Of a stretch of DNA of 64,000 nucleotides, positions 762-61,059 are shown in pieces; positions within the stretch are counted from its first letter, which is position 1; every line of letters starts with the position of its first letter. The notes under the pieces were generated by a model that saw nothing but the letters and a program-made list of their open reading frames with translations, searched no databases and had not been told where the DNA came from. The stretch comes from Octopus sinensis. Taxonomy: Eukaryota. The stretch lies in assembly GCF_006345805.1 (NCBI RefSeq), contig NC_043002.1:72044001-72108000 (forward strand), read 5' to 3'. The position numbers were made by a program, and so were the translations under genes.

Positions 762-1257
762 GGTGAAGGAGTGGCTGTGGGGTAAGATGCTTGCTTCCCT
801 ATCACAAACGAGGCAAGAAGTTATCCAAGGATTGTGCCGAAGGCGAGTCCAAGGGTTTGTGTGAATGATATATGTGTGTATGTATTAGACGTCACTGATT
901 GGTTGAAATTGCAGAAATTGAAGAAGAAAAAAAACAAATATCTTACAAACTATAAAATTTTCTCAATAAAGCCAAGAGAAAAAGATTTTTTATAAACACA
1001 TTCTACCAGTATACGAAGTTTAAAATTTTTTAGTTACCTAGAAATTATGTAAAAAAACTGCCGTTCAAACCGAAAAGATCCAATCTCTCTATTGATAGCG
1101 GACCGAATAAGTATAATCTACGTAGAGCTCTAACTCATACAGTAGTATTCATACATCCAACTGTTCTTACAAGATATATATGTATATGTATATAGATATG
1201 CATATGGAGGCGCGCACACACAAACAGTACGCAAACACACACACACACATATATACA

Positions 1258-5660: not shown

Positions 5661-6047
5661 CGTAGCTGTGTGGTAATAAGCTTGCTTCCCAATTACATAA
5701 TTACATGGTTATGGGTTCAGTACTACTACGTGACACCTTGGGCAGGTGTCTTCTAATATAGCCTTGGAGGCCGACCGAAGCTACGTGAGTGGATTTCGTA
5801 AAGGGAAACTGAAAGAAGCCTGTCGTATATATATATATATATATGTATGTATGAATATATGTGTCTTCTCCATCAACGCTTGACAATAGGTGTTGGTGTG
5901 TTTACGTCCTCATACCTTAGAGGTACGACAAACAATATTGACTGAATAAACACCAAGCTTTAAAAAGTATTATGGTTGATTCGTTCGATTAAAAATGCTT
6001 CAAGGTGGTGCCCTAACATGGCCACGGTCTAATAGCTGAAACAAGTG
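5658..6047 (+). mobile_element. SINE family A
   Basis: Head GCTGTGTGGTAATAAGCTTGCTTCCC...GGGTTCAGT, the shared body, and tail GCTGAAACAAGT. Confidence 0.85.
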
Positions 6048-6055
6048 AATGTATG

Positions 6056-6096
<41 letters not shown>

Positions 6097-6246
6097 ACAT
6101 ATATATGTATGTATATGTATGTATATATATGTGTATATACATCTATGTGGGGGGTGTATGTGTATGTATTTATATATATATATGTATACATATATTTGTA
6201 TATATATGTATATATACATCTGTGGGTGTGTGTGTATGTGTATGTA

Positions 6247-6295
<49 letters not shown>

Positions 6296-7621
6296 TTATA
6301 TATATATATGTGTATATACATCTATGTGGGTGTGCGTGTATGTGAATGTATTTATATAAATATATATATGTGTGTGTGTGTGTGTGTATATATATAATGT
6401 GGGTGTATGTATGTATATAAATAAATATATATATAAGTATATATATATGTGTGTGTGTGTGAGAGTGTGTGCGTGTGTGTATGTATATATAGATATAGAA
6501 AACATGTGAGATCGACTTTTACTAAGTACATTCCCAACAAACCTTCCTATGATACAAACGGATGACCTTATACTATTGAAAGAAATCGTTAATCGTTATT
6601 GCTGTTAGGATGAACATTCTTTTCAATGATTTCTTCAATTCATCGACGACTTTAAAAGAAAATAAAATAAAAATAAAAAAAAACAGCACAAAAATTTAAG
6701 TTTTAATATTTTTCACTCTGTTTTTTATTGCATTTCGTTTCTTGTTCCATATAACTTTTATTGATTTACCTCGAACTGAACAGTGTTTAGTTTTCACGAA
6801 TTGTTTATTTTACCATCTAAACTTTTTTTCTTCTTCCACTTATTTATTTTATAATTGTTTCCTTTTCCATTCACATTGATTATTTATTCGTGTATACGCA
6901 TTTTCTTTTCTTTTCCTTTTCTTCTTTCTTCTATTTCGGCTTTACTATTCTTATTCTTATTCTTCTTCTTTTTCTTCTTCTTATTATTATTATTTCAATT
7001 GAATATTCTCCTTATTGATTGGAATATGTGTTTATTTACATAGTGGCATGAAAATGTGGCTATAATGATTTTTTACATTTCCTTGTAGTTCCAGCTTTAT
7101 ATTTTTTTTCCTTTCTTATTTCAAGAAGTTGTCACTTCCTCTCTCTCAGTTATAGCCAAAGTCACATGGTGTGTCCTGTCGAGCTGCTGTGTATATTACT
7201 TTCAGATTAATCAGTGATTCGCAGACGCTGCTCTTAAGTAGAATAACAAAACAAACGTAATTATGTATAAGTCAGTATGCATCAAAAGAAACCTATATAC
7301 GGAAACGTTGTGGTTTTACAATCAAAACTGATTAAGTAAAACGTAAAAAAAAAACATCAATATTATCAACTGAATTCTAGAGTTATAAAAAATGGTATTA
7401 TCTGGATGATATTTAAACTTATCCATATTATTGTTTATTTATTCCAATTGTTTTTTTAAGCGGTTTTTCCTTTTAATTTGACGGAAATCTTGTTACTTCC
7501 ACTTTTACATTTATTTAACTGCCACCAAAACATATCGGTTTTTTTTTTTTTTGCCCGTTTATCATATTCTGCTTTATAAAAGAAGTTCGTTCCTACACAA
7601 TTCTTCAATGTTAGAAAAACT

Positions 7622-7842
7622 TAAGGCGGCGAGCTGGCAGAATCGTTGGCGCTGCCGGGCAAGATGCTTAGCAACATTTCCCCTGTCTTTATGTTCTGAG
7701 TTCAAATTCCGCCGAGGTCGACTTTGCTTTTCATCCTTTCAGGGTCGATAAAATAAGTTCCAGTTGAGCCCTAAGGTCAATGAAATCAACTTACCCACTC
7801 ACCCGAAATTTCTGGCCTTGTACCAAAATCTGAAACCAAATA
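7622..7842 (+). mobile_element. SINE family B
   Basis: TAAGGCGGCGAGCTGGCAGAATCGTTGG...TGAGTTCAAATTCCGCCGAGGTCGAC...GGCCTTGTACC. Confidence 0.85.
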
Positions 7843-7930
7843 TTAAATTAAACTTGGAGAGTAGCTTGAAGAATCAATAGAGCGCTGAACACAATGTCAT
7901 GTGTTTCTGGGAAAGTTGGCTAGCCTTTTT

Positions 7931-8285
7931 CGTCGTGTAGTAAGTAGCTTGCCAACCAACTACATGGTTCCTGGTTCAGTCCCACTGCGTGGCACTTTGG
8001 GAAGGTGTCTTCTACTATAGCCTCGGGCCGACCAAAGCCTTGTGAGTGGATTTAGCAGACGGAAACTGAAAGAAGCCCGTCGTATATATATGTATATGTA
8101 TATATGTGTGTGTGTTTGGGCGTCTGTGTTTGTACTCCCAACATCGCTTGACAACCGATGCTAGTGTGTTTACGTCCCCGTAACTTTGCGATTCGGCTTA
8201 CAAAGAATAAGTCCTGGGGTTGATTTGCTTGACTAAATGCGGTGCTCCAGCATGGCTGCAGCCAATAACTGGAACAAGTAAAAGA
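7931..8285 (+). mobile_element. SINE family A with an unoccupied AAGTAGCTTGC target site
   Basis: TAGTAAGTAGCTTGCCAACCAACTACATGGTTCCTGGTTCAGTCCCACTGCGTGG... Confidence 0.88.
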
Positions 8286-9644
8286 TAGTAAAGAGGGATA
8301 GACAGTATTGCAGAGGTTATAACTTAACCACCTCTGCTGTTCCTGGGATGCTTCCAAAAGCAAGCGCCTAGTCCCAAGTACACTAGCCACCTCTTCACTC
8401 ATGAATAATTCACGAAGGAAATACAAGTCAATACATCTGCAGTATCCACGAAACCACAGGGGATGTGAAATATTGGTCAATCCTAAACATACGTATATGC
8501 TTAAGGGAACCTCCCGCCAGATTTTCTATTGGGATTTATTTGCTTATCCTTTTCTAAATTACCCCAGGAGGCAGTAGCGGTTTATTATTGTAGTGAGTAC
8601 GAAAGTGGCAAGCTGAAAGAATAGTTATTGCACCGGACCAAATATGCTTGGCGGCATTTTCTCCGGCTTTGTTTTGAATTCAAATGTCGCCGAGGACGAC
8701 TTTGCCTTTCATCCTTTCGGGCTTGAGTAAATAAGTGCCAGTCAAGCACAGGGGTTGAAGTTCCCTCACGCCAAATTTCAGGACTTGTGCTTATCGTATT
8801 ATCATAGTGGACATGGTTTGTTCAGAGCGAACCCCACTCTCTCGTCCTTCAAACGTGTATTGGTCTGCTGCAAGTGTGCCTCGAGCCGTATAGTTATCAG
8901 AATGCAATGTTTGTATTGAGTTATCTTCTCATAGATGAGCAGCTAAAGAGTTGAAGGGACTCATCTGCTCTCAGTCCGTTGGGGTATTTTGGAGTGGCAT
9001 TATTATCGAGGCTGTCCTTTTGGGGTCGATAAATTAAGTATTAGTTGTGTACTTGGGTTGATCTAATCGACTGTCCCCCTCCCCCCGAATTTCAGGCCTT
9101 GTGCCTATAGCAGAAAGTATTATTCCCCAGGCAGTGGAGGAGTGTTGTCGATAAAATAAGCGCCAGTCAAACTACTGGACGAGATGTCAAGGACTCTAAC
9201 TTCTCACAAAATGCACAACTATGTAACTATGCTAGGTAAACTATGTTAGAAATGAATACAATAAATATCGAACGATAAAATTCGAAAATGGGATATCAAA
9301 AACGCACACTTAATATTGCATCACAGAAACACTATATTAGTATAGGTATTATGTGAATTACTAATCTACTAGCATTGGCCGTGAATTCATTTCAAGTAAC
9401 GTTCGTGGCAATCAGCAATACGAATGTATCCGTATATGTTGTAATATGAAGCTGCACAATACGAGCTGTGTAGCTTGTTGAAACACTCAGGTAGAACCTT
9501 GCTTAAAGTAAAGGTACCTGTTTACAACTGGCTACATAGTATTTGCAGTGTCAATAAAGAGATAGACTATATCGATTCTTTGGCAAATGGGTCGATATTT
9601 TTCGGCTAGTCTAGCTGCAACTTCAAAGTAAATACTCTGTGGAT

Positions 9645-9769
9645 GTCGGAATCGGTTGAGTGATCTAAGAGGACAGACTGAAAGCATATATGTCGTATCT
9701 TAGGCAGACCATTCGATAGTCTGTTCTGTTCCACGAATTTGGGCATGGGTTCGAGTCCTGCTTCTGTCA
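9645..9769 (+). pseudogene. Intron-containing tRNA-Leu(CAA)-like pseudogene
   Basis: GTCGGAATCGGTTGAGTGATCTAAGAGGACAGACTGAAAG [~40 nt] TTCTG...GGGCATGGGTTCGAGTCCTGCTTCTGTCA aligns to eukaryotic tRNA-Leu(CAA) (GTCAGGATGGCCGAGTGGTCTAAGGCGCCAGACTCAAG...GGTTCGAATCCCACTTCTGACA). The acceptor stem and anticodon are damaged. Confidence 0.7.
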
Positions 9770-11524
9770 TAAATCTTTGATGTCAGTACCTCAGTATAGC
9801 CACAACCTACTAACTGGAAATAATAAAAGTGTAAATGTTTAACCAATAAAGCATCCCTATTGAAATTTTTCTCTCAGATTATATTTCTATAATTATATTC
9901 TCTAACGTGTCCTTTATTTTCTTAGATGGTAGGGTGTGATTTGAAGGAGAATTTGTCTAGTATTCTTAGCGACCACATAGATATTCACTCTTGAATAATG
10001 CCGTTAGCTATTGGCGTAACACAAATGAAAATATATTTTTGATATCTTCTGACATCACTCCTCTGACAACAGACAGTCATCTAATACCAAGAATTCCCTT
10101 ATTGCATCCTACACACACACCACATGAGGCCTCATCATTGCATAGTAATGTCAATAAACAATATTTCAGTTAATGAACTAATTCGTTCTTTCGAATTATT
10201 GGGAAGTTTGTTTCCTTTTTAATTATACTTCGTTTTTTGTTTGTTTTTCTTTTTATATATTTAGTGGGGATCTTGCTTTTCATGTACAAAGCCACAGGAT
10301 TCTGCTTAACGACTACTTTCTACATATTATTAGCTTAATATAACAGCAACAATCCTGAAAAATTTCATTTCGATATGTTTACAGTCCGCAAGAGACAATT
10401 TGCATATAATTAGTAACCACCTCTAGAGCGAACATTTGATGCACTTCCGGCAAATATCAACATGCCGTCAATGCGTAACACTTAAGTTTGCTAAGGGAGA
10501 ACAAAATACCGCACAGTGGATTCAAAAGGAAATAGTTTCTTCTTTCTATTTAATGGTAGTATTCTGTGTTCTGCTAATTGTCACCTTGAGAATTCACAAT
10601 TAATTACTAGCTCAAACGCTTTCGTTTGTTTCTCCGAATGCTACAATGTCTTAATTTCATAGCTTTAACTGTATCATCCCCATGAGATATGCATTCGTTC
10701 TGCTATTTAGTCTATGATACTGAATTTATGACGATAAACTATTATCGTATCAAGTTATATCAGATTAATTTGACAGTGCCTCTCACACACTAGTTTCTTT
10801 TCGTTTAATCCCTTGATTTGTGTCACATGATCTACAAGCCTCATCCTATGTCTTATCATTACTTGATTTAGTTTTCCTTAAATAAAATGGTCTGCAGACC
10901 ACTTTGTAGTTTCCAGAAATACTTCCAGTATTATCCTGTTCCAGAGCTTCCCTCGCTATGAAAATGATTTCTTCATTTGTGATTGCTCTAATTCTTCCAA
11001 GAATTATATTTATGATCCATTTGATGTACTCACGGCATGGTTTCGGTTTTCACCTAGACCAATTTCCCATTTTATTCTGAAAGAACTAGATGAAACTTGA
11101 CAGTAACACATCTCACTGAAATTAGAATGACCGATATGCAAATGAGATTGTTGTTTTTCTTTACTACATAATAGTTCAGGTGTTTTTTTATGAGGTTGTA
11201 GCAAAAAGGTACAAGATTTGGTAATTCTCATTTTTTTTTAAATGGCACTTGCGGCATAAATGAAGAAAGGCAATTAGAAGAGGTTATCAAAATCTGAGCA
11301 CGACCCCTTACATGTTTGTTATTAGGTAAATTTAATTGCAATAATTGGATCTTCAAACGCTAAACAAATACACCTGAAATCAAAACTGTGTTGTTGGTAA
11401 ATGCACAAAATCAGGCATTTTTGTAATACTTGCAAATATGTTATGTATTTCCAATGAATTATTAACCATTTCAAAGCATATACATCAAAGAGAACCAGTA
11501 TCTTGTTAGAGCTGAAATCATATA

Positions 11525-20126: not shown

Positions 20127-21460
20127 CATATATATAAATATACATACATACAAATATACATATATACAAATATTATGTGGGGGGGGGCTATGCACGCATA
20201 TAAATGTGTGTGATGTGTGTGTGTGCGTGCGTGTGTGTGTGTGTGTGCGTGCGTGTGTATGTGCGTGCGTGTGTGTGTGTGTGTGTGAGAGCGAGAGAGA
20301 GAGAGAATATTTGTATCGTATTTGTATTATCCTTGCAGCGACTCACAGCGATTAAGAGATATACTTTTGGTTAAATAAAAACCGACGTGTGATTTTAATC
20401 ACAAGCAGACATTACTTCACTTATGAAGCTTAATACACTTGGGAAACGTATGAACATCAGACTCCGCATTTCTACTTATTTAAAATACAGGACATTTTAG
20501 GCCTAGTCAGAAATGAATCAATATCTAATAAGCTATCACAATCAGGAATAATTGTACTAATAATTTTTTATACACAATCTTATGATTATTTATTTATATA
20601 TTTATTGATTTGATTTTATATATTCATTTCGTCTATTTATTTATTTATTCATTTATTTTCGCGTGATTTACGCGGCCCGGTGTTCTATATTTGAAGCTTT
20701 TCATTTCTAGCTGACATGTTGAATAGTTTTAATTAAACCGGAAATTCAGAATGCACCAAATAATGGTGTGCATATGTGAATGTCTGTGTTTGCGTTAGTG
20801 TGTGCGTATGTGTGTGTGTTTGTGTGAGACCTTGCTTGTGTGCGTGCGCGCGAATGTGTGTGCGTGTGTGAGTGTGGATGTATGCAATATATTACTATGT
20901 ATATAGATATATTGGTAGATACATGTTCTACATGTGTACTGATATATGTGTGCGTCTATAAATTCATTTAGACTTGACTATATATACGCGTATAAGTAAA
21001 TAATATTATATATATATATATATATAATATATATATATATTATATATATATATATATTGTTATTTTTCAGTCTCTCTAAAGGAGACTACGGCAGCGGAAC
21101 TGAATATTAATAGTTATCGCCAAGCTAAAATGGCAGCCCAGGAAAATAGGACGAATGCTGCCGTTGATTAGCTCCAAGAGACCATCGCCTCTAGCTAGCT
21201 ATGTGACACATGAACCTGTGTCCAATATAACCTTCGAACTGGGGAGGTCAGCCGCTTCCCCTTGCTGGTCTGGCATTTACAGGCTAGTTTCAGGGTATTT
21301 GCCTCCTATCAATGTAGAGTAGCCGAACCCAGCAGGCTTCGCTGCTGACCGTCTGTTCGAAGGATTATTTACCTAAAATTCAGTGGAATACTTCCACTGT
21401 TTTTCAAAAATAGAAATATTAATATTTCGGTACTGGATAGTAATAGTTATTGCCAAGTTA

Positions 21461-32021: not shown

Positions 32022-34423
32022 CAGTGGTTCCCAACCTTTTATTTTTATGCCGTTTTATTTTCACACTAAAATACTTAATGAAAAGACAAAATAGTCTATT
32101 TACACCTCGAAATTTATTTTAGCAAACAAGAGATAAAATTTTAAATTTATGTTAGTAAACAAAGATAAACACAAGATCTCAAAATCCTTTTTCATAAAGT
32201 CGTTCTTTTTTAGACCGTTCAGCTTGTGACTAGCTTGATATTGGTGTTTCTGACACAAGATATCAAAATCATTTTTCATAAAGTCGTTCATTTTTAGTCC
32301 ATTCAGCTGGTGACTAGCTTGATATTGGTGTTTCTGACACAAGATATCATAATCAATTTTCATGAACTCATTTAGCTTTAGTCTGATAGTTCCTCTGCTG
32401 TTGACAATTTTTTTTTCTTTTTCTACTTAAAATATCTACAACAGATGAAAATGCAGATTCCACCATGCATCTGGTAGGAAAAGAAATTATGCTTGCTTCT
32501 ACATGTCGAAAAATATTTGGGTGTGATTCTTTTATCGATATGTAGGTAAATACACCTTCTTTTTCAACTCTTTTTCTCAGTTTCATATTCTCTTCCAAAT
32601 CTAACAACATTTCAGCCAACACAAAATTTTCATCTTCTGGCTCATAATTTTCTAGGTCTACAAACCAGAGTGGATAATCCATCTTTAATAAATCATTGTA
32701 TCTTCTTTCAAAGTCTACATGAAGACCTTCAATAATAGCAATGCATGCAGCAATGCCTTCTGATGTAGTAACAGTGGTGTTAAAATCTTAAAATGATGCC
32801 AAATTTATTTATTCAAACTAATTTTTCCAAAATTTTAATTTTCCCATATACCATTTTATCTTCTGAGGTCAGGTGACCAAATCTGATTTTCTACCTAAGT
32901 TAAGTAGATTCACTGTTTTAAAAATATCACTCAAGCAGAATATTTTGGATTTAAACTCCGAAAGTCTTTCCAAAATTTTCTTAGCAGTATCAGCTTGCTT
33001 TTTGGTGTTGTAATGAGTCATCTGACTCTTGAACATGAAAAAGTTGATTAATGGTTCCCACAAATTCACAAGTCTTTCAAGGCTCAGGCCTTTTGACAAC
33101 CATCTTACTTCTGTGTGAAGCAATAGGGTTTTAAACTCTTCATCTTCACAGAATTGTATAAAAAATCTTATTATTCACTGAGTTTGATTTGACAAAGTTA
33201 ATTGCATGTATGGCAGTGTTGAGTGCTTCTTCCATGTGTCCTCCAATATTCTTAGCAACCAAATGCTGTCTGTGGATAATGCAATGTATATGAAAAATGT
33301 GAAAAGCAATTAATTTCATTCTAGAAGCAAAGCCTTTCACTTTTCCAGTCATGGCTGCAGCTCCATCTGATGCAATGTTGATCAAATTAGTCAATGGAAT
33401 ATTTTTTTCATCAAAATACTACATTACATCATTGAATATATCTTCTCCATTAGTAGTTTCAGACAAACTTTTAATGAATAACATTTCTTCCTTTATATCA
33501 TCTTCATGGATGAATCTGACATAGACCAGAATGATAGCTTGGTTATGAATTGTGTTCTCATCAACCTGGATAGAAAAATGTGTCTGGAAAATTTCCACAA
33601 TCTTCTCCTCAACAAAATTAGACATTTCATCCTGTCTTCTTGTAACTGTGTTATTTGAAAGTAGAATTGTACTCAGAGTAGATGCAGCATCTTTTCCCAG
33701 AACCTCTTTTGCACAAGCTATCATAGCAGGCTTGACAAGTTTCTCACCATAAATCTGAGGTGCTGCAACCTTGGCAATAATTTCAGAGACCAAATAACTT
33801 GGTTTGAGTGTCTTTGCTTTTTCAGTATTGATCTTTACAAAGCCGGGTAGTTTGATTGGCTGTATTTTCTTTTTATTCTCAAAACGTTCCCCTACCTTTA
33901 CCAACAGATGACGGATGCCTTAATTTCTGATGCTGATTTGTCATGATGGCATCACATTCAAGATACATAGGTTTTGAGTCTACAGATACAAAACCAAACA
34001 TGATAAAATCTTCTTTGTAGTTCCTCAGTTTTGCCTTCTTAACAGTTGTTTCAGACATTATTACAACTGATCTTTAAAAAATATAAATGATAAATACTTT
34101 ATTTTTATAAAATAATAAATACTTTATTTCTATAAATTAAAAGTATCAAATATATTATTAAACAATATTATGTAGCGAAATATTAAAAATATCAAAATTT
34201 ATTATGAAACTGTTGTGATTGTAAAATTTAAATTAGGTAATTCTTAATTGTAATATATTATTTTGTTTTCTTATTATTATTGTCTTCTTATAAATTATTA
34301 TTAGCTAACAGTGTTTTTATTATCGAACAATATTGTGTAGATCTGAAATGGCTTCAAATTTTTATGGCTACAAATTCTCTGGGGACCACCACTGGGCCTC
34401 AGGGACCACGCTGGGAATCACTG
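32022..34423 (-). mobile_element. Full-length hAT (Buster/Charlie-like) DNA transposon
   Basis: Termini CAGTGGTTCCCAAC and GCTGGGAATCACTG. Identical 8-bp TSD TTCTATAC at 32014-32021 and 34424-34431, with central TA as in Buster-type targets. Confidence 0.95.
32300..34058 (-). pseudogene. hAT transposase pseudogene (frameshifts and stops)
   Basis: MSETTVKKAK...KPMYLEC, FSIQVDE, IASDGAAAMTG, HCIIHRQHL, LLHTEVRWLSKG, FPTRCMVESAFS. Confidence 0.93.
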
Positions 34424-37242: not shown

Positions 37243-37633
37243 GATTGGCTGTGTGGTAAGTAGCTTGCTTACGAACCATGTGGTTTCAGGTTCAGTCCCA
37301 CTGAGTGGCACCTTGGGCAAGTGTCTTCTACTATAGCATCGGGCCGAGCAAAGCCTTGTGAGTGGATTTGGTAGACGGAAACTGAAAGAAGCCCGTCGTA
37401 TATATGTATATATATATGTGTGTGTGTTTGTGCGTCTGTGTTTGTCCCCCCAACATCGCTTGACAACCGATGCTGGTGTGTTTATGTCCCCGTAACTTAG
37501 CGGTTCTGCAAAAGAGACCGAAAGAATAAGTACTAGGCTTACAAAGAATAAGTCCTGGGGTCGATTTGTTCGACTAAAGGCGGGGCTCCAGCATGGTCAC
37601 AGCCAAATGACTAAAACAAGTAAAAGAATAAAG
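37243..37633 (+). mobile_element. SINE family A with an intact unoccupied target AAGTAGCTTGCTTAC
   Basis: GGCTGTGTGGTAAGTAGCTTGCTTACGAACCATGTGGTTTCAGGTTCAGTCCC...ACAAGTAAAAGAATAAAAG. Confidence 0.9.
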
Positions 37634-38978: not shown

Positions 38979-39373
38979 AATGAATGTTTTTATATATAAT
39001 GAACGTGAAATACAGGAAGGGACGAACACGGAACACAGACAAATCATTCGAAGCCTTCAATCTTCAGTCAGACACCGAATCATCATAGCAAATTTCGGCT
39101 GTTCAATTCTGATATTTGCTCCAACTCGGCCAGCCCCAAGAAAAAAAACTAAGCTGTAAGCATTAGATTTCTTGGTAGAAGACAGGAATGTGAACGCACA
39201 AGACGGATGTGAATACAAGAGATGAAAACGAAATTGAAAACAGTAATGAATAAACAAAATATATATAACGGTGGTTGTCATACGACTTTAGACCAAATGA
39301 GACAAAAACAACAACAACAACATAGCTGGCGTAGAAATAATTACCGTTTCGGTAGCGGGGACACATGTTGGTC

Positions 39374-41090
39374 TATTTCTTTATTACCCACTAGGGGCCA
39401 CGAAGAGGGAACATTACAAAACATGGGGGGACATAAAACAATGCGATTAAAATTATGATTAAATGAATGTTAAAATGAAAACATGATAACATGAAAGCGA
39501 TGCTAACGGCCCCCTCCGCCAGCATCACTTACCTTTCCGTTTCCTATCACGATTCCAAAGTTTTTCACCTCACCTTTCATTTCTCTCTCATATCTCTCTA
39601 TCATATCATCCTTCATAAATGCTGATAAACAATTTATACGTAGTTCATTGCACTTGCTCATCAAAGAGCCCATGAGTTCAAAATCGAATACCGCATAGCT
39701 TCCGTCCTCATACTCCTGCCATACATCGTCTTCAAAAAGCCTTCTTGCGTTCTCAGTATCCCCCTTCCCCACAACACATAAAAAGTAGGACTGGGGCTTT
39801 TGTATGTTCTGTGTGTCTGTTTTCGTTTTTCTTGTAGGCGGGGAGTGGGTGGGATTGCTGTTTGCGGGGGCAGGATGGGTCTCCAAGGGTGTGGGTGGTA
39901 TTGGGGTGGGTTGGGGCTTCGCACAGTTTTTCCTTTTCTTTCCTTTTCTCTTCTTTCTGCCCTCCACACACTCTTTTTGCATCTCCTCCTCCTCTGTCAT
40001 TTCCCTTTCCGTCTGCTTCTCTTTAATTTCTTCTTCTTTTGGGGCCTCCTCTTTTGGAGTTTCCTCAACGATTTCCTTTTCTCTTGGTGGGGGAGGCAGA
40101 AGGCTCTTATGTGGCCCCTCAGGCCACACTTGTAACAACGTGGAGCTCTGCCCTCCACCCACACTCTCATAATCACGTCTCCCAATTTAATGCTCTCCGC
40201 CAGGTCCACCAGTACCTCGCTCTCCGCCTGCACGTTCAGCTCCACTATTACGCCTCTCCAGCCCTCGGTCTTGACCGAGGCATGGAGAATATCTACTTTC
40301 TCCTCGTGGCCGCTGATCACAGCCGCCACAATCCACTCAGCCTCCACGTTTGGTGGCACTCCCTCCACCCTTACTCGTGTGATCCTTCTATTCAAGTACA
40401 TAGGTAAAAGTGTTACCCTTTCTGACTTCACCGCCTTCACCGCCATCCTCCTCGCTGCAGTCTCACTTTTAAAATGCACCACTGCAGTACCGTACTTCGA
40501 TCCTCGAGTCAGGAAAATGATTTCCTCCTCCGATCTTCTCAGGGCCTCCTCTATCCATTCCATGTTTACGATCTCTATTTTCTTTCTTTCGTTCACGAAC
40601 ACCCTGTAAATTATGGTCCTCTTATTGTACCATTCCTTTCTCTTTGGTGGTGGTTCCAGTTCCACCTCGCCGCTGTCCTTCCTCATATACCTCTGGAAAC
40701 CTGGCAATTTTTCTAGGTTTATTTCTTTTTCCTGTTCCGTCTTCTTTTTTGCAACTCCTGCGTACGTTTTCCTGTTTTTTTTTCTCCACATTATTTACAT
40801 CACCGATTTGCTCGTCTTCAGAGTTCGATGTCTCCGACAAGCTCTCAAATATCCATTCTTCCTCCGACTCCTCCACTAGGGAGTGGTCATCCATCTCCTC
40901 CCGCCTGACAGGCCAAAACGGCCGTCAAAACAGAAATAGTGTAACGCGCAGAACCAGTGGAACGCGAAACCGCTTTAACGCCGTGCAAAATTTCCACAAC
41001 AACAACAATTTTTTTTGATCTTTTTTTACCGAATTTTACGAGCGTAAAAAAACACGACCGAACTCAAACTGACAAACAGACAACTGATCC
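39374..41090 (-). mobile_element. ORF1-only L1/Tx1-like non-LTR retroelement (element C)
   Basis: 19-bp TSD GCGGGGACACATGTTGGTC at 39355-39373 and 41091-41109. Contains a 5' UTR, one gag-like ORF, and a ~130-nt U-rich 3' UTR ending GCCCCTAGTGGGTAATAAGAAATA. No EN/RT sequence. Confidence 0.88.
39503..40894 (-). pseudogene. Retroelement ORF1p (gag-like, CCHC zinc knuckle) split by two frameshifts
   Basis: Overlapping ORFs 40622-40894, 39997-40791 (VWVEGRAPR-CYKCGLRGHIRAFC) and 39503-40162 (acidic and Pro-rich tail). Confidence 0.85.
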
Positions 41091-41301
41091 GCGGGGACAC
41101 ATGTTGGTCGAGATACGAAGGCCAACAGAATGGTTTAAGAAGCAGCAGGTCGCAGGAGAGAGAGAAAGAGAGACAGAGAGAGAGGGAATCAAAGAGGGTG
41201 GAAGGCAGGGGACAGAATCAGTGACCAAGAGAAAAGGAGAAAGAAGGGATTAAGGAGGATGGGAGGAAGAGGGGAGGAGGATGGGAGGAAGAGAGGGGAA
41301 G

Positions 41302-54715: not shown

Positions 54716-55720
54716 GTTGAAGGCGGAGAAATGGCAGATTCGTCAGCACACAGGGCAAGATACTTAGTGACATTCCGTCAGTCTTTAAGATTTGAGTTCA
54801 AATTCCGCTGTAGTAGACTTTGCCTTCTATCCTCTTGCGATCGATAAAATACGTTTCACTTATTCACTGAAATCGGTGTATTTTCAGGCTTTGTGCCAAA
54901 ATCAAAAACCGTTGCTGCGTATTCGTTGGGCCGAGAGTTGTTCGGATCGTTGAAACGTCAGACAAAATGCCTGGTGGTATTTCTTCCGACTCACTACGTT
55001 CTGAGTTCAAATTCCACCGAACTTGACTTTGCCTTTCATCATTTCGGAGTTTATTTAAAAAGTATCAATTCAGTGCCGGAGTTAATGCAATCGACTTTCC
55101 ACTCTTCGAAAGAATGCTAGTCTCCGGCCATGATTAAAAAGATAAAAAGAATTATCATATATTCGTAGGGCAGAATATCGTTAGAACGTCGGGAAAGGTG
55201 CTTTGCAAATTTCTTCCGCCTTAACCCTTTGAGCCCGTAACACCGGTTTACTGGTGGATGGCTTATTCTTCTCTATACCGTAGCACCGGTGGAGTGCCAG
55301 GCATGTGGTAAAATAAGGTTCAGGAGGTTAGGGGTCAAAGGGTTAAGGCGGTTTGATGGCATAGTCGTTAGCACACCGAGCAAAACGCTTAGGGCATTTC
55401 GACCATCTTTATGTTCTGAGTTCAAATTCCGCTGAGATCGCTTTTACCTTTCATCCTTTCACGGTGGTGGTGGGAGGAGGTTAATAAAAGAAGTACCAAT
55501 TGTACACTGGGATCGAGATAATCGACTTACCCCCAACCCCAAAGATTGTTGGCCTTGTGCCAAAATTTGAAACCAGTATTTCTTCTGCTTTTGTACACTC
55601 TGAGTTCAAATCCCACCAAGGATAATATAATAAAATATAACACCAGTCAAATATTAGGGTTGACGTTAGTGACTTACCCTTTACGCTCAAAATTGCAGGC
55701 CTTCAGCCTAAATTAAGAAC
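54716..55720 (+). mobile_element. Cluster of about 5 diverged SINE family B copies
   Basis: Repeated GAGTTCAAATTCC and GCCTTGTGCC motifs at about 54800, 55005, 55420 and 55605. Confidence 0.75.
55225..55342. mobile_element. 118-bp piggyBac-type MITE
   Basis: TTAA|CCCTTTGAGCCC...GGGGTCAAAGGG|TTAA. Confidence 0.8.
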
Positions 55721-56082
55721 CATTAACCGTAGTAGGAATATACGGTTTTCTTTTTTTTTTTGTATCTCCAAGATTATGTTATTAATTACGTTACCATAAA
55801 TATATTTTCATGAAAGAATAACCACAAGTGCAAAAGATAATGCCGGTAAAACAGCATATCTTTTCATGGAATGCGAACCAAGTAACTTCATTTTAAAATA
55901 TCTCTACCTACCAAAAATATGCAGTCTAATTATGTTATACAGTAATCCCTCGACTATCGCGGGTGTTACGTTCCAACACCCCTTGTGACAGGTGAAAATC
56001 CGCGAAGTAGAAACAGCACTGTACTGTATATCTTTTGTATTATTTTTATAACAGGAGTGGCAGCGTGGTAAGTAGCTTGCTT

Positions 56083-57489
56083 ACGCGCATTGTCGGTTTA
56101 TTCGCTGTGCTGATTTTTGATGAGCCGGACGGAATTTTTTGAGCTGCTTGTCAGCGGATTGTCGGTGAGTGTTGTACCAGTGGAAAGGAATGTATTCGGA
56201 CCTTAACGAGTATGAACTATCCTCAGCAAAGGAGGAGCTCGTTAAGGCGGTAAACAGAATAGACGAGTATTTGGAAAAAGTAAAGAGTTTTGTTGAGGCT
56301 GCAGGGAAGTAGATCTAACCGGACTGAAGGAGCTGTGTAAAATGACACAGAAGGTGGGCAGTGATGTAAAGTTATTATCCCCGAAAAAGGTTATAGTAAA
56401 TATGGAAAAGAAGACCATCACCTACAAGGTACACTCCTTGGAGAATAAGCGGTTTGAACAGGTGGAAACGGAAAAAATAGAAAAGGCACTGAGGAGATGA
56501 AACAATCGAGCCAAATTACGTATATAACAAGAGGAAGTAAATACGGTTGTCCAGTTTAGGACAGTGGAAGAGGCGAGGAGGCTGGCGAGTGTAGCGGTGA
56601 GGACGGAGGAAGTAGTGCTTCTGCCCACGTATCTTGGAAGAAAGACTTCCAAGGTGAGGGTAGAAGCTAATCCACCGGATATAGAAATGGCTTGGGTAGC
56701 GGTAGCTGTCCTTGTTGGAAGCGAAGAGAAGGTGGCTGTCCTCCAAGCCACAGAAACAGGAGAAGGAGGGTGGAAAGGAAGGACATTGCAACTAATTATT
56801 CAGGCGGAGAAAGGTCAATTGGAGAACTTGGCAGAGACAGTGACGTTGGCGGAAATCGTGCTGAGGTTGTGGGTAGGACAATGGCTGAGGATATAGTTGT
56901 GGAGATAGAAGAGAAAAGAGAGAAAGAAAAAATAGACGGAGGAAACTAGAAAAAGGAGAAAGAATGGAAAGTTACAGAGAGCAGGAGGAGAAAGAGGAAA
57001 AAAGAAATCTCACTGAGTATGATGTGGTACCCCAGTCCAGCTCCATCCCACCCAAGACCACTCAGACCCATCCTCCCCATACAGACACCAAACCCACCCA
57101 CCCCATTTCCCCACAAGAGAAAAAGAAAAAGAAAGAACAGACACCACAAAATGTAGAAGACCCCCTCCCGGTGAAAAATGTTACGAATGCAAGGCGGAGA
57201 GAATGTTGTCACTAAGTGATGGAGAAAGGAGTAAAATGATTGGACTGAAAGCGAAAAAGGACTTAGGACCCAGAGGCGGCGAGTGGCATTACTCAGTGTG
57301 AGGTGAACAGCACACTCTTCATAATATCATTTTCAGATATCATTCATATTATCATATTTTAATTTGTTCATGTTCATTTTCATGTATCATTCATTATATA
57401 TTTTTTTATATTTTTAATTGTTATATTTCTCCACATGTGTTGTAGCGTCCCCCTCGATGTAATGTCTTTATGACAAAATCATTGAAATA
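56083..57489 (+). mobile_element. ORF1-only L1/Tx1-like retroelement (element A)
   Basis: Flanked by AAGTAGCTTGCTT at 56070-56082 and 57490-57502. The ORF1 relic is clearly alignable to element C. The 3' end is GTAATGTCTTTATGACAAAATCATTGAAATA. Confidence 0.88.
56342..57215 (+). pseudogene. ORF1p relic of element A (stops; CCHC region missing)
   Basis: EKIEKALRR...VVQFRTVEEARRLASVAVRTEEVVLLPTYLGRKTSKVRVEANPP...LRLWVG aligns with element C EWIEEALRR...VVHFKSETAARRMAVKAVKSERVTLLPMYLNRRITRVRVEGVPP...MRVWVEG. Confidence 0.85.
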
Positions 57490-57502
57490 AAGTAGCTTGC
57501 TT

Positions 57503-59508
57503 ACGCATGCGTGTTTGTTAGTTGCTTATTGGATTGAAAACTGTCAAGACGTGAGTTGGTGGCCGTCTTGAATGGAAAAAACTGTTGAAGAGGCGCCACT
57601 GCAAGGTAGGCCCTTGTTTTTTGGGGTTTTTTTAAGGGACTCAATGGGGGATTTGTTGTATGACATTGTTTGTCCTTTTTTCATATAAGAAATCCTCATT
57701 GGGTCTCGAACATTTGTCTGCTGCAGTCGCGCTGAGTAACTCACTTAGCGGTGAGAATTGTTTTGTTTTGGTGGGCGTGTCTGGCTACCAAAATTTGAAA
57801 AGTTCATAAAAATTCGACCCATTCGTGGAGGAATTTTTTTGTCTGCTACGGTGAACTGGAGTACCTGTGTGAAGCAATATTTTTGAGGATTACCTGTGGA
57901 TTATTTACGGATTACCTTTCTTTGTTTCTTTGGACTTTATTTGAATATTTTGAACTTTTTTTAACCGTTTCCTGTGTTTTTTTCAAAGCATGGCAAAAAA
58001 TAAAAACACTGTCTTGGAGTGGGAAATTGTGCCCTCCCCCCACAAGCAGCGGGTAAAGGACTTTAATGAGAGAACGATGGTGCTGAGGACATATTCCAAG
58101 TCCCTCGACACCAACACTGTGTTCTCTCAAGTAGATATTGAAAAGGAGTTGGCAAAATATCTGCCAACCATCAAGTTTATTGCAAGGAGTGTCAAATATG
58201 CAACAGGGTGGTTGCTATTTGATACCCCTAAGGAGGCTCGCATTTTTGCGAGCCAGCCCCTGGAAGGAGAGAAATTTCTGTTTCTGCCTACATATCGTGG
58301 AAGGAAATTGACAAGAGCTTGGGTGTGTGGGCTGCCACCCGCAATAGAGTCTGAGTAGATAGAGGACACTATCCGCCGTGGTCTGGGTGGCAGCGGAGAC
58401 AAGCTCTTAAATGTTAAAATGATGCCTGCGGCTGATTAGGTGGGGTCAAAGGCAGTTTTGACTCTGTGGACCCAATCAGCCGATGATCTGGTGTTCCCAT
58501 ATTTTTTGAGGATGGCTGGGTCCAGGTATCCGGTGATTCTTGAGGGACTCCCCCCCCCCAGTGTCATCAGTGCCTGGAGCCTGGCCACATTAAGAAGAAC
58601 TGTCCCAAGGACCAGAGCAGGGTAGTGCAGAAGTTAGTTGAGGAAGAACCCCCTCCCCCTTCTCCTCTGGAAGGAGAGATGGAAGAGGAGGGAGTGAACT
58701 CCTCCGAAAAAAAGGGGAGAAAAGGGAAGAAGTGGAGCAACAATGGTTGCACTCCGAGGGATCCAAAAGGTTGCGGGAGGAAGCGAGGCTCCCGCGGATA
58801 TGGCGAAGGAGCCAACCCCTCCCGCACCAAAGATAAAAGAGAAAAAGAAAAAATGAATGGGACAGTGCCGGAGGTGTGCAGTGTACTGCCGGCATGTCCC
58901 GAGGCCTCTTCGGTGGGAATCGTGCCACCGACAGAGGAAGCTGTGGCCCTTTCCAGTGAAAGTAAAGAATATGTGGCATTCTATCTTAGGGGAGGGGTTG
59001 TTGACAACTTTGTTGAGAGTTGTCTTGATAGTCAGAACCTGATGGACTCGGCCTGTACTGATTACCAGCATTGGCTGTCGCATGTGGCGGCGCTGGTGGT
59101 GAAAGAGAGTTCTTTCGAATAGTGGAGTCCTGGTCGAAGGAAGATTACAATTATATCTTTTGGTGCCCGACTTGCGGCTGATGGATTGTCTGCGGGCGAC
59201 AAGAGAATTGATAGGTGATGGTTGAAGAGACTTTGTGTCTCAGTCTGTGTAAGAGGTTTATTGCCTCATTTTTGTGTATTCTATTTTGTAGAAAGACAAA
59301 AAGAAAATTTGGAATAAACCAAAGTAAAAGTTTTAATACCTCATTTTGTTTTGTTTTGTAAAAAATAATGCATTAGAGAAGCAAATAATCGGCGGGCATT
59401 TTTTGTCTTCTCCCATCAATACCATTTTTCATCATTCATCTCATTAAAGTTTCTGTCCAGCCAGCAAGCTACTCTTTGTAATGCCATTATGGCAAATTTT
59501 ATGAAATA
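57503..59508 (+). mobile_element. ORF1-only L1/Tx1-like retroelement (element B)
   Basis: Flanked by AAGTAGCTTGCTT at 57490-57502 and 59509-59521. The 3' end is GTAATGCCATTATGGCAAATTTTATGAAATA. No EN/RT motifs. Confidence 0.88.
57990..59122 (+). pseudogene. ORF1p relic of element B with CCHC knuckle (2 stops, 1 frameshift)
   Basis: FLFLPTYRGRKLTRAWVCGLPP...VILEGLPP / CHQCLEPGHIKKNC (CX2CX4HX4C) across the poly-C at about 58550-58559. Confidence 0.85.
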
Positions 59509-60059
59509 AAGTAGCTTGCTTGTCAACCACATGGTTACGGGTTCAGTCCTACTGTGTGGGACCTTGGGCAAGAGTCTTCTACTATAGCCTTTAGCCGACT
59601 AAAGCCTTGAGAGTGAATTTCGTAGACGGAAACTGAAAGAAGCCCGTCGTATACATATGTATATGTTTGTGTGTCTGTGTTTGCCCCCCTCCCCTCCGCC
59701 ATCGTTTGACAACCGATGATGGTGTATTTACGTCCCCGTAAGTTAGCGGTTCAGTAAAAATAACTGATCGAATAAGTACTAGGCTTACAAAGAATAGGCC
59801 ATGTGGTAGATTTGTTCGACTAAAGGCGGTGCTCCAGCATGACCGCAGTCAAATGACTGAAACAAATAAAAGAATAAAAGAAGATTTATTTTATTATAAA
59901 TGCAAAACAACACCACAAAGGAATCGACGTAAGCTTGAATAATAAACCGCGATGAGTGAACCGTGATAGGTGAATCGCGATATGGCGAGAGATTACTGTA
60001 TATGATTGAACGGAAATCCAGTTTTTTCCTTGAGACCAGAGACTCACATGGAAGGTTAA

Positions 60060-60290
60060 TCCACACCGGTATTTCACTGCTTCTTTATTTTATCGACCCA
60101 GAATGATCGAATGTATGAGAAGCAAAGTTGACGTCGGTGGGATCTAAACTCAAGGAGTAAGGAACCGGAAAAATTGTTGCAAAGCATTTTGTCCGGCGTA
60201 CAAACAATTATGCCGACATAAAGACAGATGAAATACCGCTAAGCATTTTGACAGTGTGGTAACGATTTTATCAGTTCACGGCCTTCACAG
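60060..60290 (-). mobile_element. SINE family B (diverged)
   Basis: Reverse-complement match to the family B body (TTTATCGACCC...AAAGTTGAC...AAGCATTTTGTCCGGCG). Confidence 0.65.
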
Positions 60291-61059
60291 AATTCATAAC
60301 CTTTATTTTTAAAAATTGTTTGCTATTACGACTTAGCTACTACGCATTCAAATTTTAAGTTAATAGAGTTGACATAGCTCTCTTATATACAGAGTAACAA
60401 GCTTTAAGATTCCTCCCGTAATGAATAAGCTTTATTAATTTTCATTTTTTTTTTTTAGATAGTCATCGAAATATTCAATATTAAAAAATTTTCAAACGGC
60501 CATAAATAATCAAATATTCTGCCTGTTCTACAATATAGGACGGGTGGAATATTTTTACTTCATTTAAAATATTATGCGAATCATACCTTGAAAGATATTT
60601 CACACCGGTCATTGTTACTTTACTCGTAAGCTGCCTTTTAATTAACATTTTTATTCACCAATATACAATCCAACAAATATGAACAACATGTTCTATGCTC
60701 TCGTTATATTGATTTCTTTCCAATTCAACACGGGGAAATATTCTCATTCTCCATGCTTCGATAAACAGGCTCTGCTCGGGTATCTCAATAGCTGCATTTT
60801 CAGATTCATATGATCAGTAATCCCTGACTACATGTTAAAATTCTCTGACGCAATCTCTCTGCTACCAACACACACATTGTTTGACATTTAAACAGACTAA
60901 CTTTTCGGTATACAGTCAAATGTATGCTGATTAATTTTAGCAACAAATACGTTTCTTTTCAATGCCTATTCAATACAACCAGCAATTCTCAAGTAAAAAC
61001 ACATGGAAACGTGTTACGGCACCGAAGGTATAACAGACAGATTATATTGGTTTTGAATT

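What the first reader, a model, noticed from the sequence alone, without database searches (positions are those of the whole stretch)
56054..59530. Two different ORF1-only LINE-like elements inserted head-to-tail at the same nucleotide of a SINE: a candidate SINE-targeting retroelement system
Seen: AAGTAGCTTGCTT occurs three times (56070, 57490, 59509), separating SINE head | element A (1.4 kb) | element B (2.0 kb) | SINE body. Both elements begin ACGC, end ...GAAATA, lie in the same orientation, and carry related but highly diverged ORF1s. The uninterrupted site is visible in other SINE copies (e.g. about 37258). Established: Tx1-clade L1 elements are often sequence-specific (tRNA arrays, U2 snRNA, 5S rRNA, other transposons) and can stack at their regenerated target. 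Inference: a site-specific Tx1-type endonuclease acting in trans uses the tRNA-derived head of a very abundant SINE as a safe harbour. Insertion between the A and B boxes should also disable the SINE's Pol III promoter.
Basis: partly seen in the sequence, partly recalled or inferred. Interest (0 to 1): 0.92.

Follow-up and report, generated by a model that had tools for sequence, protein, structure and literature searches.

The report
SINE-head-targeting ORF1-only LINE stack
Two decayed, reverse-transcriptase-less relatives of an L1/Tx1-type jumping gene sit one behind the other at one exact nucleotide of an abundant octopus SINE, and relatives in another octopus species use that same nucleotide, so this is a site-specific retroelement family with an unusual target, not a new kind of system.

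Summary
AAGTAGCTTGCTT occurs at 56070, 57490 and 59509 (0.05 expected by chance). It separates the SINE head, element A (1407 bp), element B (2006 bp) and the SINE body. An uninterrupted SINE copy lies at 37243.

Two more B-family copies in Octopus sinensis (L001, L012) start at the same nucleotide of two other copies of this SINE. A sister ORF1-only element (L011) sits, with a 19-bp duplication, in the head of a second SINE family.

A and B have no ORF2. Homologous ORF1s (two RRM-like folds plus a CCHC knuckle) lie upstream of an ORF2 with endonuclease, reverse transcriptase and zf-RVT domains in full-length relatives (L002, L003, L014). That ORF2 is closest to human L1 ORF2p.

Other families in the lineage have other targets: an (ATT)n microsatellite, another repeat, and their own 5' leader. 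They also stack head-to-tail. All tails carry a covarying hairpin and no poly(A).

Not shown: the autonomous partner of A and B, formal Tx1-clade placement, the tRNA origin of the SINE head, and genome-wide counts.

Verdict: a new variant (SINE head as target, ORF1-only riders) of the known target-specific L1/Tx1 kind. Interest is moderate.

The parts
56053..56069 (+). 5' part of the SINE-1 head upstream of the duplication. It contains the box-A-like TGGCAGCGTGG at 56058-56068.
   Evidence: Aligns to the heads of other SINE-1 copies in the window; sequence read.
56070..56082 (+). Target-site duplication, copy 1 (AAGTAGCTTGCTT).
   Evidence: Exact match. The same 13-mer occurs once in the intact SINE at 37258.
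56083..57489 (+). Element A: a decayed ORF1-only LINE derivative, 1407 bp. It starts ACGC and ends GAAATA.
   Evidence: ORF1 remnant at about 56190-56896 matches O. bimaculoides P0002 (65%) and P0003 (56%) and the ORF1 of element C (38%, E 6e-35). It has no ORF2 homology.
57463..57475 (+). 3' tail hairpin of A (TGTC-TTTAT-GACA), 14 nt from the element end.
   Evidence: RNAfold. Covariation across 10 tails: 95% of cells paired against 70.5% in shuffles, and 3 of 4 pairs show changes on both sides.
57490..57502 (+). Target-site duplication, copy 2, between A and B.
57503..59508 (+). Element B: an ORF1-only LINE derivative, 2006 bp. It starts ACGC and ends GAAATA.
   Evidence: 73% nucleotide identity to O. 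sinensis copies in L001 and L012. It has no ORF2 homology.
57990..59122 (+). B ORF1, broken by two stop codons (about 58356 and 58437) and one frameshift at a C-run (about 58556). It comprises an RRM-like region, a CCHC knuckle at 58559-58606, a charged linker and a C-terminal domain.
   Evidence: Translation. 77% aa identity to P0001 over 189 aa. zf-CCHC E 0.004, below Pfam's cut-off. The AlphaFold model of P0001 (pLDDT 82) matches tandem-RRM proteins.
59463..59473 (+). AGCAAGCTACT in the B 3' UTR, the reverse complement of the core of the duplicated target (AGTAGCTTGCT).
   Evidence: Read from the sequence. Its function is unknown.
59482..59494 (+). 3' tail hairpin of B (TGCC-ATTAT-GGCA).
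59509..59521 (+). Target-site duplication, copy 3, continuous with the SINE body.
59522..59880 (+). SINE-1 body, with the box-B-like GGTTCAGTCCT at 59540-59550.
   Evidence: 82% identical over 377 bp to the intact copy at 37258-37632.
37243..37632 (+). Intact SINE-1 copy showing the empty site (GGTAAGTAGCTTGCTTACGAACC).
39374..41090 (-). Element C: a third ORF1-only member of the same lineage, nearly intact apart from one frameshift after the CCHC knuckle. Its tail is ...GTGGGTAATAAAGAAATA.
   Evidence: ORFs; sequence; homology.
41091..41109 (-). Upstream copy of the 19-bp duplication of element C (GACCAACATGTGTCCCCGC). This is not a SINE-1 site.
39355..39373 (-). Downstream copy of the 19-bp duplication of element C.

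Best explanation
A and B are non-autonomous, ORF1-only derivatives of an octopus L1-superfamily (most likely Tx1-type) LINE lineage. This lineage integrates by target-primed reverse transcription at family-specific sites.

For the A and B families the site is one position in the 5' head of an abundant SINE. The bottom strand is nicked between GGT and AAGTAGC, and the top strand at least 13 nt downstream. This duplicates AAGTAGCTTGCTT.

Each insertion regenerates the 13-mer next to its original context, so the site can be hit again. Alternatively, the RT can jump from one template RNA to a second one during a single event. Either route gives the head | A | B | body stack.

The enzymes must come in trans from a full-length relative. 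Recognition probably goes through the conserved 3' hairpin and short A-rich tail (no poly(A)).

Shown here: the anatomy, the homology, the lack of ORF2, recurrence of the same junction at three independent SINE copies in at least two assemblies, autonomous relatives, and hairpin covariation.

Inferred: the nick positions, supply of RT in trans, the order of A and B, and loss of Pol III promoter function.
For: - The triple 13-mer is far above chance, and the joined flanks are colinear with intact SINE copies.
- Independent B-family copies start at the same SINE nucleotide: L001:5488 (O. sinensis CM016886) and L012:~10741 (CM016865). Their upstream flanks and SINE-head variants differ.
- Sister ORF1-only elements have clean duplications of 10-19 bp and the same type of tail. 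C is in the window. E is in L004, and its empty site is present uninterrupted at window 21266-21424. F is in L011, in a second SINE family's head. G is in L013.
- Full-length relatives carry a homologous ORF1 plus an ORF2 with Exo_endo_phos, RVT_1 and zf-RVT domains. The ORF2 matches human L1 ORF2p at E 2e-71.
- Family-specific targets and stacks occur elsewhere. L002 lies inside (ATT)n. In L014 the middle element has a perfect 18-nt duplication in another copy's leader. L003 is a tandem array.
- The 3' hairpin covaries.
- The ORF1 model resembles tandem-RRM proteins and is followed by a CCHC knuckle.
Against: - Only four A/B-family elements at three SINE copies were seen, and no genome-wide tabulation was possible.
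- Both O. sinensis B copies have lost their 3' ends. The SINE body downstream of the element is therefore seen only in the window.
- No full-length element with the A/B-type tail or the SINE-1 target was found.
- The relatives C and D sit at sites that I could not show to be repeats, so not every family is demonstrably site-specific.
- Tx1-clade placement was not tested against reference RTs.
Confidence: 0.75

Rival explanations
1. The SINE head, or at least the 13-mer, is part of the elements themselves: a chimeric element that carries a SINE-derived 5' end, for example as a promoter or a 5' transduction. On this reading its presence upstream of every copy says nothing about targeting.
For: All four A/B-family copies have SINE-head sequence directly upstream. 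In L001 and L012 no SINE body can be seen downstream, because the 3' ends are lost.
Against: - In the window, B is preceded by only the 13-mer, not by a head. The SINE body resumes exactly at the 13-mer after B. Under this model that needs two truncations at the same nucleotide.
- The head variants in L001 and L012 differ in the way that genomic SINE copies differ.
- Sister element F has both SINE-2 flanks and a 19-bp duplication. C, E and G have unrelated 10-19 bp duplications. The lineage therefore does make long duplications.
Confidence: 0.08
2. There is no sequence specificity. A and B landed in a very abundant SINE by chance, or through a loose preference for repeats, and the stack is a local coincidence or a rearrangement.
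For: SINEs make up about 11.6% of the O. vulgaris genome (PMC13282606). SINE-1 covers about 5.6% of this window. Relatives C and D are not at demonstrable repeats.
Against: The same nucleotide and the same orientation recur in three independent SINE copies. The duplication is exact in all three window copies. For a roughly 400-bp SINE, chance placement at the same nucleotide three times is negligible.
Confidence: 0.04
3. The system is site-specific, but the A|B stack was made in a single integration event. The reverse transcriptase jumped end-to-end from the 5' end of the B RNA to the 3' end of an A RNA. That A RNA carried read-through target sequence.
For: AATAAA spans the junction between element end and target (GAAATAAAGTAGC). 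Transcripts of resident copies should therefore end inside or beyond the 13-mer. In L003, tandem copies abut with only about 10 nt of variable linker. Template jumping by non-LTR RTs is established for R2 (my own knowledge).
Against: In L014 the middle element has its own perfect 18-nt duplication, as expected for separate insertions. A looks more decayed than B, which weakly suggests different ages.
Confidence: 0.13

Closest known systems
Tx1L in Xenopus laevis and other target-specific Tx1-clade LINEs: Keno (U2 snRNA), Mutsu (5S rRNA), Dewa (tRNA), Kibi and Koshi (microsatellites)
   Same: These are L1-superfamily elements with an APE-type endonuclease and RT. Each family has its own repeated target, including other transposons. 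Insertion is orientation-specific at a fixed nucleotide, and relatives target microsatellites (compare L002 in (ATT)n). Background from PMC4494074.
   Different: Here the target is the head of a SINE, which is not listed among Tx1 targets in the papers I could read. The copies at the site lack ORF2. Tx1-clade placement of this lineage was not tested.
Tx1-Mar LINEs and SINEU in crocodilians (Kojima 2015, PMC4494074)
   Same: Autonomous Tx1 families and non-autonomous riders share one transposon target. Copies are often flanked by other copies at that target, forming stacks.
   Different: There the target is a Mariner DNA transposon and the riders are short SINEs. Here the target is a SINE and the riders are 1.4-2 kb elements that keep ORF1.
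HAL1 ('half-L1') elements of mammals (Bao and Jurka 2010, my own knowledge)
   Same: These are non-autonomous LINE derivatives that keep ORF1 and the 5' and 3' ends, have lost ORF2, and are mobilised in trans.
   Different: HAL1 is not site-specific and ends in poly(A). Here several deeply diverged ORF1-only families (A, B, C, E, F, G; 24-38% ORF1 identity in the comparisons made) coexist, and at least the B family is site-specific.
HeT-A of Drosophila telomeres (my own knowledge)
   Same: It is a Gag/ORF1-only non-LTR element. It inserts head-to-tail at one kind of site and depends on an RT supplied in trans.
   Different: It belongs to the Jockey clade and adds to chromosome ends, with no endonuclease-defined internal target.
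R1 and R2 in rDNA (my own knowledge)
   Same: They insert precisely, and their template RNA carries read-through target sequence that helps priming. Their target is a multicopy 'safe harbour'.
   Different: The endonuclease (R2) and the clade are different, the target is rRNA genes, and no ORF1-only riders are known there.

Membership tests
Non-LTR (LINE) retrotransposon, L1 superfamily | ORF2 with an APE-type endonuclease and a reverse transcriptase | tested here: not met
   A, B and C have no ORF2 homology (tblastn), so they are derivatives and not autonomous members. Full-length relatives with a homologous ORF1 do have these domains: L003 ORF2 gives Exo_endo_phos E 1.9e-15, RVT_1 E 8e-31, zf-RVT E 5e-9, and human L1 ORF2p E 2e-71. 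L002 and L014 are similar.
Non-LTR (LINE) retrotransposon, L1 superfamily | An ORF1 RNA-binding protein encoded upstream of ORF2 | tested here: met
   The ORF1 of A and B is homologous to the ORF1 lying 5' of ORF2 in L002, L003 and L014. The model of P0001 (pLDDT 82) matches tandem-RRM proteins at E 1e-5. A CCHC knuckle follows.
Non-LTR (LINE) retrotransposon, L1 superfamily | Target-site duplications of variable length and a defined 3' end | tested here: met
   Duplications are 13 bp (A, B), 19 (C), 10 (E), 19 (F), about 13 (G) and 18 (L014). All tails end ...AAAGAAAT(A)-like without poly(A).
Tx1 clade | RT-domain phylogeny places the element within Tx1 | not testable with these tools
The evidence is indirect only: L1-like ORF2 with zf-RVT, and L1-Tx1 is the only L1-type class in the table of recently active O. 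vulgaris LINEs (PMC13282606).
Target-specific LINE | Independent copies at the same nucleotide of a repeated target, in one orientation | tested here: met
   A and B in the window, plus L001 and L012, make four elements at three independent SINE-1 copies. The numbers are small, and there is no genome-wide count.
Target-specific LINE | The element's endonuclease cleaves the target sequence specifically | not testable with these tools
   This needs the partner's endonuclease and a biochemical assay.
HAL1-like ORF1-only non-autonomous LINE | ORF1 kept and ORF2 lost, in dispersed multiple copies | tested here: met
   A, B, C, E (L004), F (L011), G (L013) and the 1.7-kb Logan contigs L005-L008 all have ORF1 and no ORF2.
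HAL1-like ORF1-only non-autonomous LINE | Shares its 3' end with an autonomous partner | tested here: inconclusive
   The C tail is nearly identical to the tail of the full-length element in L014 (GGCCCCT(T/A)GTGGGTAATAAAGAAAT). For the A/B-type tail no full-length partner was found.
tRNA-derived SINE (the target) | Head recognisably derived from a tRNA, with box A and box B | tested here: inconclusive
   Box-A-like TGGCNGNGTGG and box-B-like GGTTCAGTCC flank the site. ARAGORN finds no tRNA in the window. Rfam gives no tRNA match at E up to 10 on the intact copy.

The most novel reading that the evidence does not exclude
An octopus L1/Tx1-type lineage may have specialised in landing in the first 15-40 nt of other retroelements. 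The sites would be the heads of two different SINE families, between their box-A-like and box-B-like motifs, and the 5' leaders of its own copies.

It would be accompanied by several old, protein-coding ORF1-only parasite families that inherit the same targets.

The targeted SINE may itself be mobilised by this lineage. Its tail has the same layout: a small hairpin followed by ...AAGTAAAAGAAT. That would close a loop in which the LINE multiplies its own safe harbour.
Probability: 0.2. Interest if true: 0.7.

Novelty: new variant of a known kind. Interest (0 to 1): 0.5.

Why it matters
Site-specific LINEs are studied as natural 'safe-harbour' integrators and as a basis for gene-insertion tools. 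A family whose harbour is a highly abundant SINE head would give thousands of neutral targets per genome. It would also be a case in which a LINE silences SINE copies by splitting their internal promoter.

The coexistence of several deeply diverged ORF1-only families, some with intact reading frames, suggests that carrying ORF1 alone can be a stable parasitic strategy. This bears on what ORF1p contributes in cis.

For octopus genomics, the finding explains a class of nested repeats and several chimeric gene models.

Tried and rejected
- Third homologous-protein search, with a 47-sequence alignment. It returned only P0001 and P0002, and only the 8000 candidates sharing most words were scored (my guess is that low-complexity words crowded these out). 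It added nothing.
- DNA look-ups for P0002 and P0003 (A family) and for the element C ORF1 found nothing on record. No second A-family locus and no further C copies could be examined.
- Rfam on 55000-61000 and on the intact SINE, plus ARAGORN on the whole window, gave no tRNA or other credible RNA family.
- Pfam on ten long proteins from the representatives search found no RT or endonuclease fused to ORF1. Several are chimeric gene models containing WD40, LDL-receptor or C2H2 domains.
- The SINE head at 767-796, which has no body after it, was considered as another occupied site. What follows has no similarity to these elements, and it looks like a different short repeat that shares the head.
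- A Penelope-like or DNA-transposon (Dada) origin was set aside once full-length relatives with an L1-like endonuclease-RT ORF2 were found.
- Splicing as the origin of the ORF1-only forms was rejected. The AG|GTAAGT at the ORF1/ORF2 boundary is retained in C, E and F, so ORF2 was lost by internal deletion downstream of it.
- Literature searches found no report of a SINE-targeting LINE or of this family in Octopus. Repbase Reports are not in the library.
Full report
**1. The observation**

The region reads exactly as described. AAGTAGCTTGCTT occurs at 56070, 57490 and 59509, and once more at 37258 inside an uninterrupted SINE. All are on the + strand. Shuffles give 0.05 matches on average.

The layout is as follows:
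- SINE head, 56053-56082.
- Element A, 56083-57489, 1407 bp.
- The 13-mer.
- Element B, 57503-59508, 2006 bp.
- The 13-mer again, running on into 360 bp of SINE body. That body is 82% identical to the intact copy at 37243-37632.

A and B both start ACGC and end GAAATA. Their last ~45 nt are 84% alike.

The intact SINE reads GCTTGCTT-ACGAACC. The 'AC' that opens both elements could therefore be target sequence, making the duplication 15 bp. The third copy reads GCTTGCTT-GT, so I report a duplication of at least 13 bp.

**2. What the elements encode**

B carries one long reading frame (57990-59122), broken by two stops and one frameshift at a C-run. It has an N-terminal region, a CCHC knuckle (QCHQCLEPGHIKKNCP), a charged linker and a C-terminal domain. 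A carries a more decayed homologue that starts MYSDL at 56193.

The two ORF1s are homologous but distant. The intact O. sinensis protein P0001 is 77% identical to B over the RRM part and 24% identical to A (E 1e-9).

Neither element, nor anything else in the window, has similarity to a LINE ORF2.

A profile search of 1.84 billion representative proteins gave 188 relatives. Those whose source could be read come from Octopus vulgaris, O. sinensis, O. bimaculoides and Argonauta hians, or from unnamed Logan/ENA contigs of 1.2-6 kb.

An AlphaFold model of P0001 (pLDDT 82) resembles tandem-RRM proteins such as NONO/SFPQ and hnRNP A1 UP1. This fits the 'RRM plus CCHC' type of LINE ORF1 protein (classification from my own knowledge of Khazina and Weichenrieder 2009).

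**3. The lineage has autonomous members**

- L003 (O. vulgaris). The homologous ORF1 is followed by an intact 1132-aa ORF2 with Exo_endo_phos, RVT_1 and zf-RVT domains. Its best solved relative is human L1 ORF2p, E 2e-71 over endonuclease plus RT.
- L002 and L014 (O. sinensis). These hold similar full-length elements.

So A and B are ORF1-only derivatives of an L1-superfamily LINE.

Formal placement in the Tx1 clade could not be tested. A 2026 repeat annotation lists L1-Tx1 as the only L1-type class in its table of recently active O. vulgaris LINEs, and gives SINEs as 11.6% of the genome (PMC13282606).

**4. Is the SINE head a target?**

This is the central question, and the evidence is positive, though from few copies.

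- Two further B-family copies were recovered through their proteins, without regard to their flanks.
  - L001 (O. sinensis CM016886): the element starts right after ...CATGGCTGTGTGGTAAGTAGCTTGCTT.
  - L012 (CM016865): it starts right after ...GTTGCCGTGTGGTAAGAAGTTTGCTTCC.
  - The upstream flanks and the SINE-head variants differ, so these are independent SINE copies. Orientation is the same. Both copies have lost their 3' ends, so their downstream junctions cannot be read.
- A sister ORF1-only element, F (L011, 1598 bp), has a 19-bp duplication, CAGAAAYGTTAGCACGCCG. Its joined flanks align colinearly with an intact copy of a second, unrelated SINE family lying 200 bp away. The insertion again falls in the head, upstream of the box-B-like GTTCAAATTCC.

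Chance cannot place four elements at one nucleotide of three SINE copies.

**5. The wider behaviour of the lineage**

Other families have other sites:
- C (window 39374-41090, minus strand, nearly intact) has a perfect 19-bp duplication in sequence I could not show to be repeated.
- E (L004) has a 10-bp duplication inside another interspersed repeat. An uninterrupted copy of that repeat lies at window 21266-21424.
- A full-length element in L002 lies inside an (ATT)n microsatellite.
- In L014, a full-length element with a perfect 18-nt duplication sits 28 nt into the 5' leader of another copy. The stack there holds at least three elements of different subfamilies.
- L003 holds three head-to-tail copies, 99.6% and 98.6% identical.
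- L013 shows an A-like element stacked on the 5' end of another, plus a 75-bp truncated tail in a SINE-2-like repeat.

Family-specific repeated targets and stacking are the known habits of Tx1-type elements (PMC4494074).

**6. The 3' ends**

None of the ten tails has poly(A). All end within 5-8 nt of an AATAAA-like motif, with ...AAAGAAAT(A) or a similar sequence.

All have a 4-bp hairpin with a 5-nt loop 12-20 nt from the end. The stem sequence differs between families: TGTC/GACA in A, TGCC/GGCA in B, GCCC/GGGT in C and D, AGGC/GCCT in E, GCCC/GGGC in G.

On an alignment of the ten tails, 95% of cells pair, against 70.5% in shuffles (0 of 500 reach the observed value). Three of the four pairs show changes on both sides, and slid registers give 20-45%. 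Two caveats apply: I derived the structure from these same sequences, and the sequences are related.

By analogy with stringent LINE/SINE pairs, this is the likely recognition element for the RT (inference).

In A and B the AATAAA spans the junction between element end and target (GAAATAAAGTAGC). Transcripts of resident copies should therefore run into the 13-mer. That could help priming at a new copy of the target (inference, by analogy with R1 and R2).

**7. Mechanism and rivals**

Best explanation: trans-mobilised ORF1-only LINE derivatives integrate by target-primed reverse transcription at one position of the SINE head. The regenerated site is then re-used.

Rivals:
- The SINE head is part of the element. 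The window's own structure argues against this. B has only the 13-mer upstream, and the SINE body resumes exactly after B. The two-sided SINE-2 insertion of F also argues against it.
- Non-specific insertion. The recurrence at one nucleotide excludes it.
- One event or two. I cannot tell whether A|B arose from two insertions or from one event with template jumping.

**8. Novelty**

Target-specific L1/Tx1-type LINEs, their stacking, and ORF1-only derivatives (HAL1, and functionally HeT-A) are all known.

What appears new is the target: the head of an abundant SINE, possibly of two SINE families. Also new is that several deeply diverged ORF1-only families share this way of life.

I found no report of this in the searchable literature. 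Repbase Reports could not be searched.

I rate it a new variant of a known kind, of moderate interest.

**9. Limits**

- The copy numbers are small.
- There was no genome-wide flank table.
- No partner was identified.
- Clade placement, tRNA ancestry of the head and Pol III inactivation remain untested.

Noticed in passing
window 39355-41109 (minus strand): A third ORF1-only element (C, 1717 bp) of the same lineage. It has a nearly intact ORF1 with one frameshift at a C-run after the CCHC knuckle, and a perfect 19-bp duplication, GACCAACATGTGTCCCCGC. Its tail is almost identical to that of a full-length LINE in L014.
   Followed up: partly
window 59463-59473 against 59509-59521: The 3' UTR of B contains AGCAAGCTACT, the exact reverse complement of 11 nt of the duplicated target, 36 nt upstream of it. 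It could pair with read-through target sequence or with target DNA. A has no such match, and the other B copies lack their 3' ends.
   Followed up: no
window 57484-57495 and 59503-59514: An AATAAA signal is formed across the junction between element end and target (GAAATA|AAGTAGC). Cleavage and polyadenylation of a resident copy's transcript should therefore fall inside or beyond the target duplication.
   Followed up: no
window 37590-37632, 59840-59880 and other SINE-1 3' ends: The SINE-1 tail (…GCAGTCAAATGACTGAAACAAGTAAAAGAAT) has the same layout as the LINE tails: a small hairpin (CAGTC-AAAT-GACTG) followed by a short A-rich ...AAAGAAT end without poly(A). The targeted SINE might be mobilised by this same LINE lineage.
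   Followed up: partly
L003 446-13026 (O. vulgaris OX597840.1): At least three head-to-tail full-length LINE copies with a period of about 5.27 kb, 99.6% and 98.6% identical. They abut with only about 10 nt of variable linker (ACACTGATAA / ACACCCGATA), which resembles the left flank GAACCCGACA. It is unclear whether these arose by repeated insertion, template jumping or tandem duplication.
   Followed up: partly
L014 3360-8645 (O. sinensis CM016867.1): [quoted passage not shown] This suggests self-targeting of the leader as a source of the stacks.
   Followed up: partly
L002 about 5725-11375 (O. sinensis CM016872.1): A full-length member of the lineage lies inside an (ATT)n microsatellite, with ATT repeats on both sides, like the microsatellite-specific Tx1 and R4 families.
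   Followed up: no
window 39520-39545; L003 7330-7345; L011 5898-5910; L004 7148-7158: The ORF1/ORF2 boundary reads AG|GTAAGT(G)ATG, a perfect splice-donor consensus that overlaps the ORF2 start. The ORF1-only elements C, E and F keep it and then pass directly into the 3' UTR.
   Followed up: no
P0002, P0003, P0063, P0091, P0098 (gene models): Several annotated octopus 'genes' are chimeras of this ORF1 with host or other transposon exons: a C2H2 zinc-finger array, WD40, LDL-receptor repeats and an rve integrase. These may be annotation artefacts or exonisation.
   Followed up: no
window 767-796: A SINE-1-type head (GGAGTGGCTGTGGGGTAAGATGCTTGCTT) is followed by unrelated sequence rather than the SINE-1 body. 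It may be a different short repeat sharing the head, or an old rearrangement.
   Followed up: partly
window 33419-33904 (minus strand): A 161-aa ORF (MVKVGERFENKKK...IFNDVM) that looks like a fragment of a transposase-derived protein. It was not searched.
   Followed up: no
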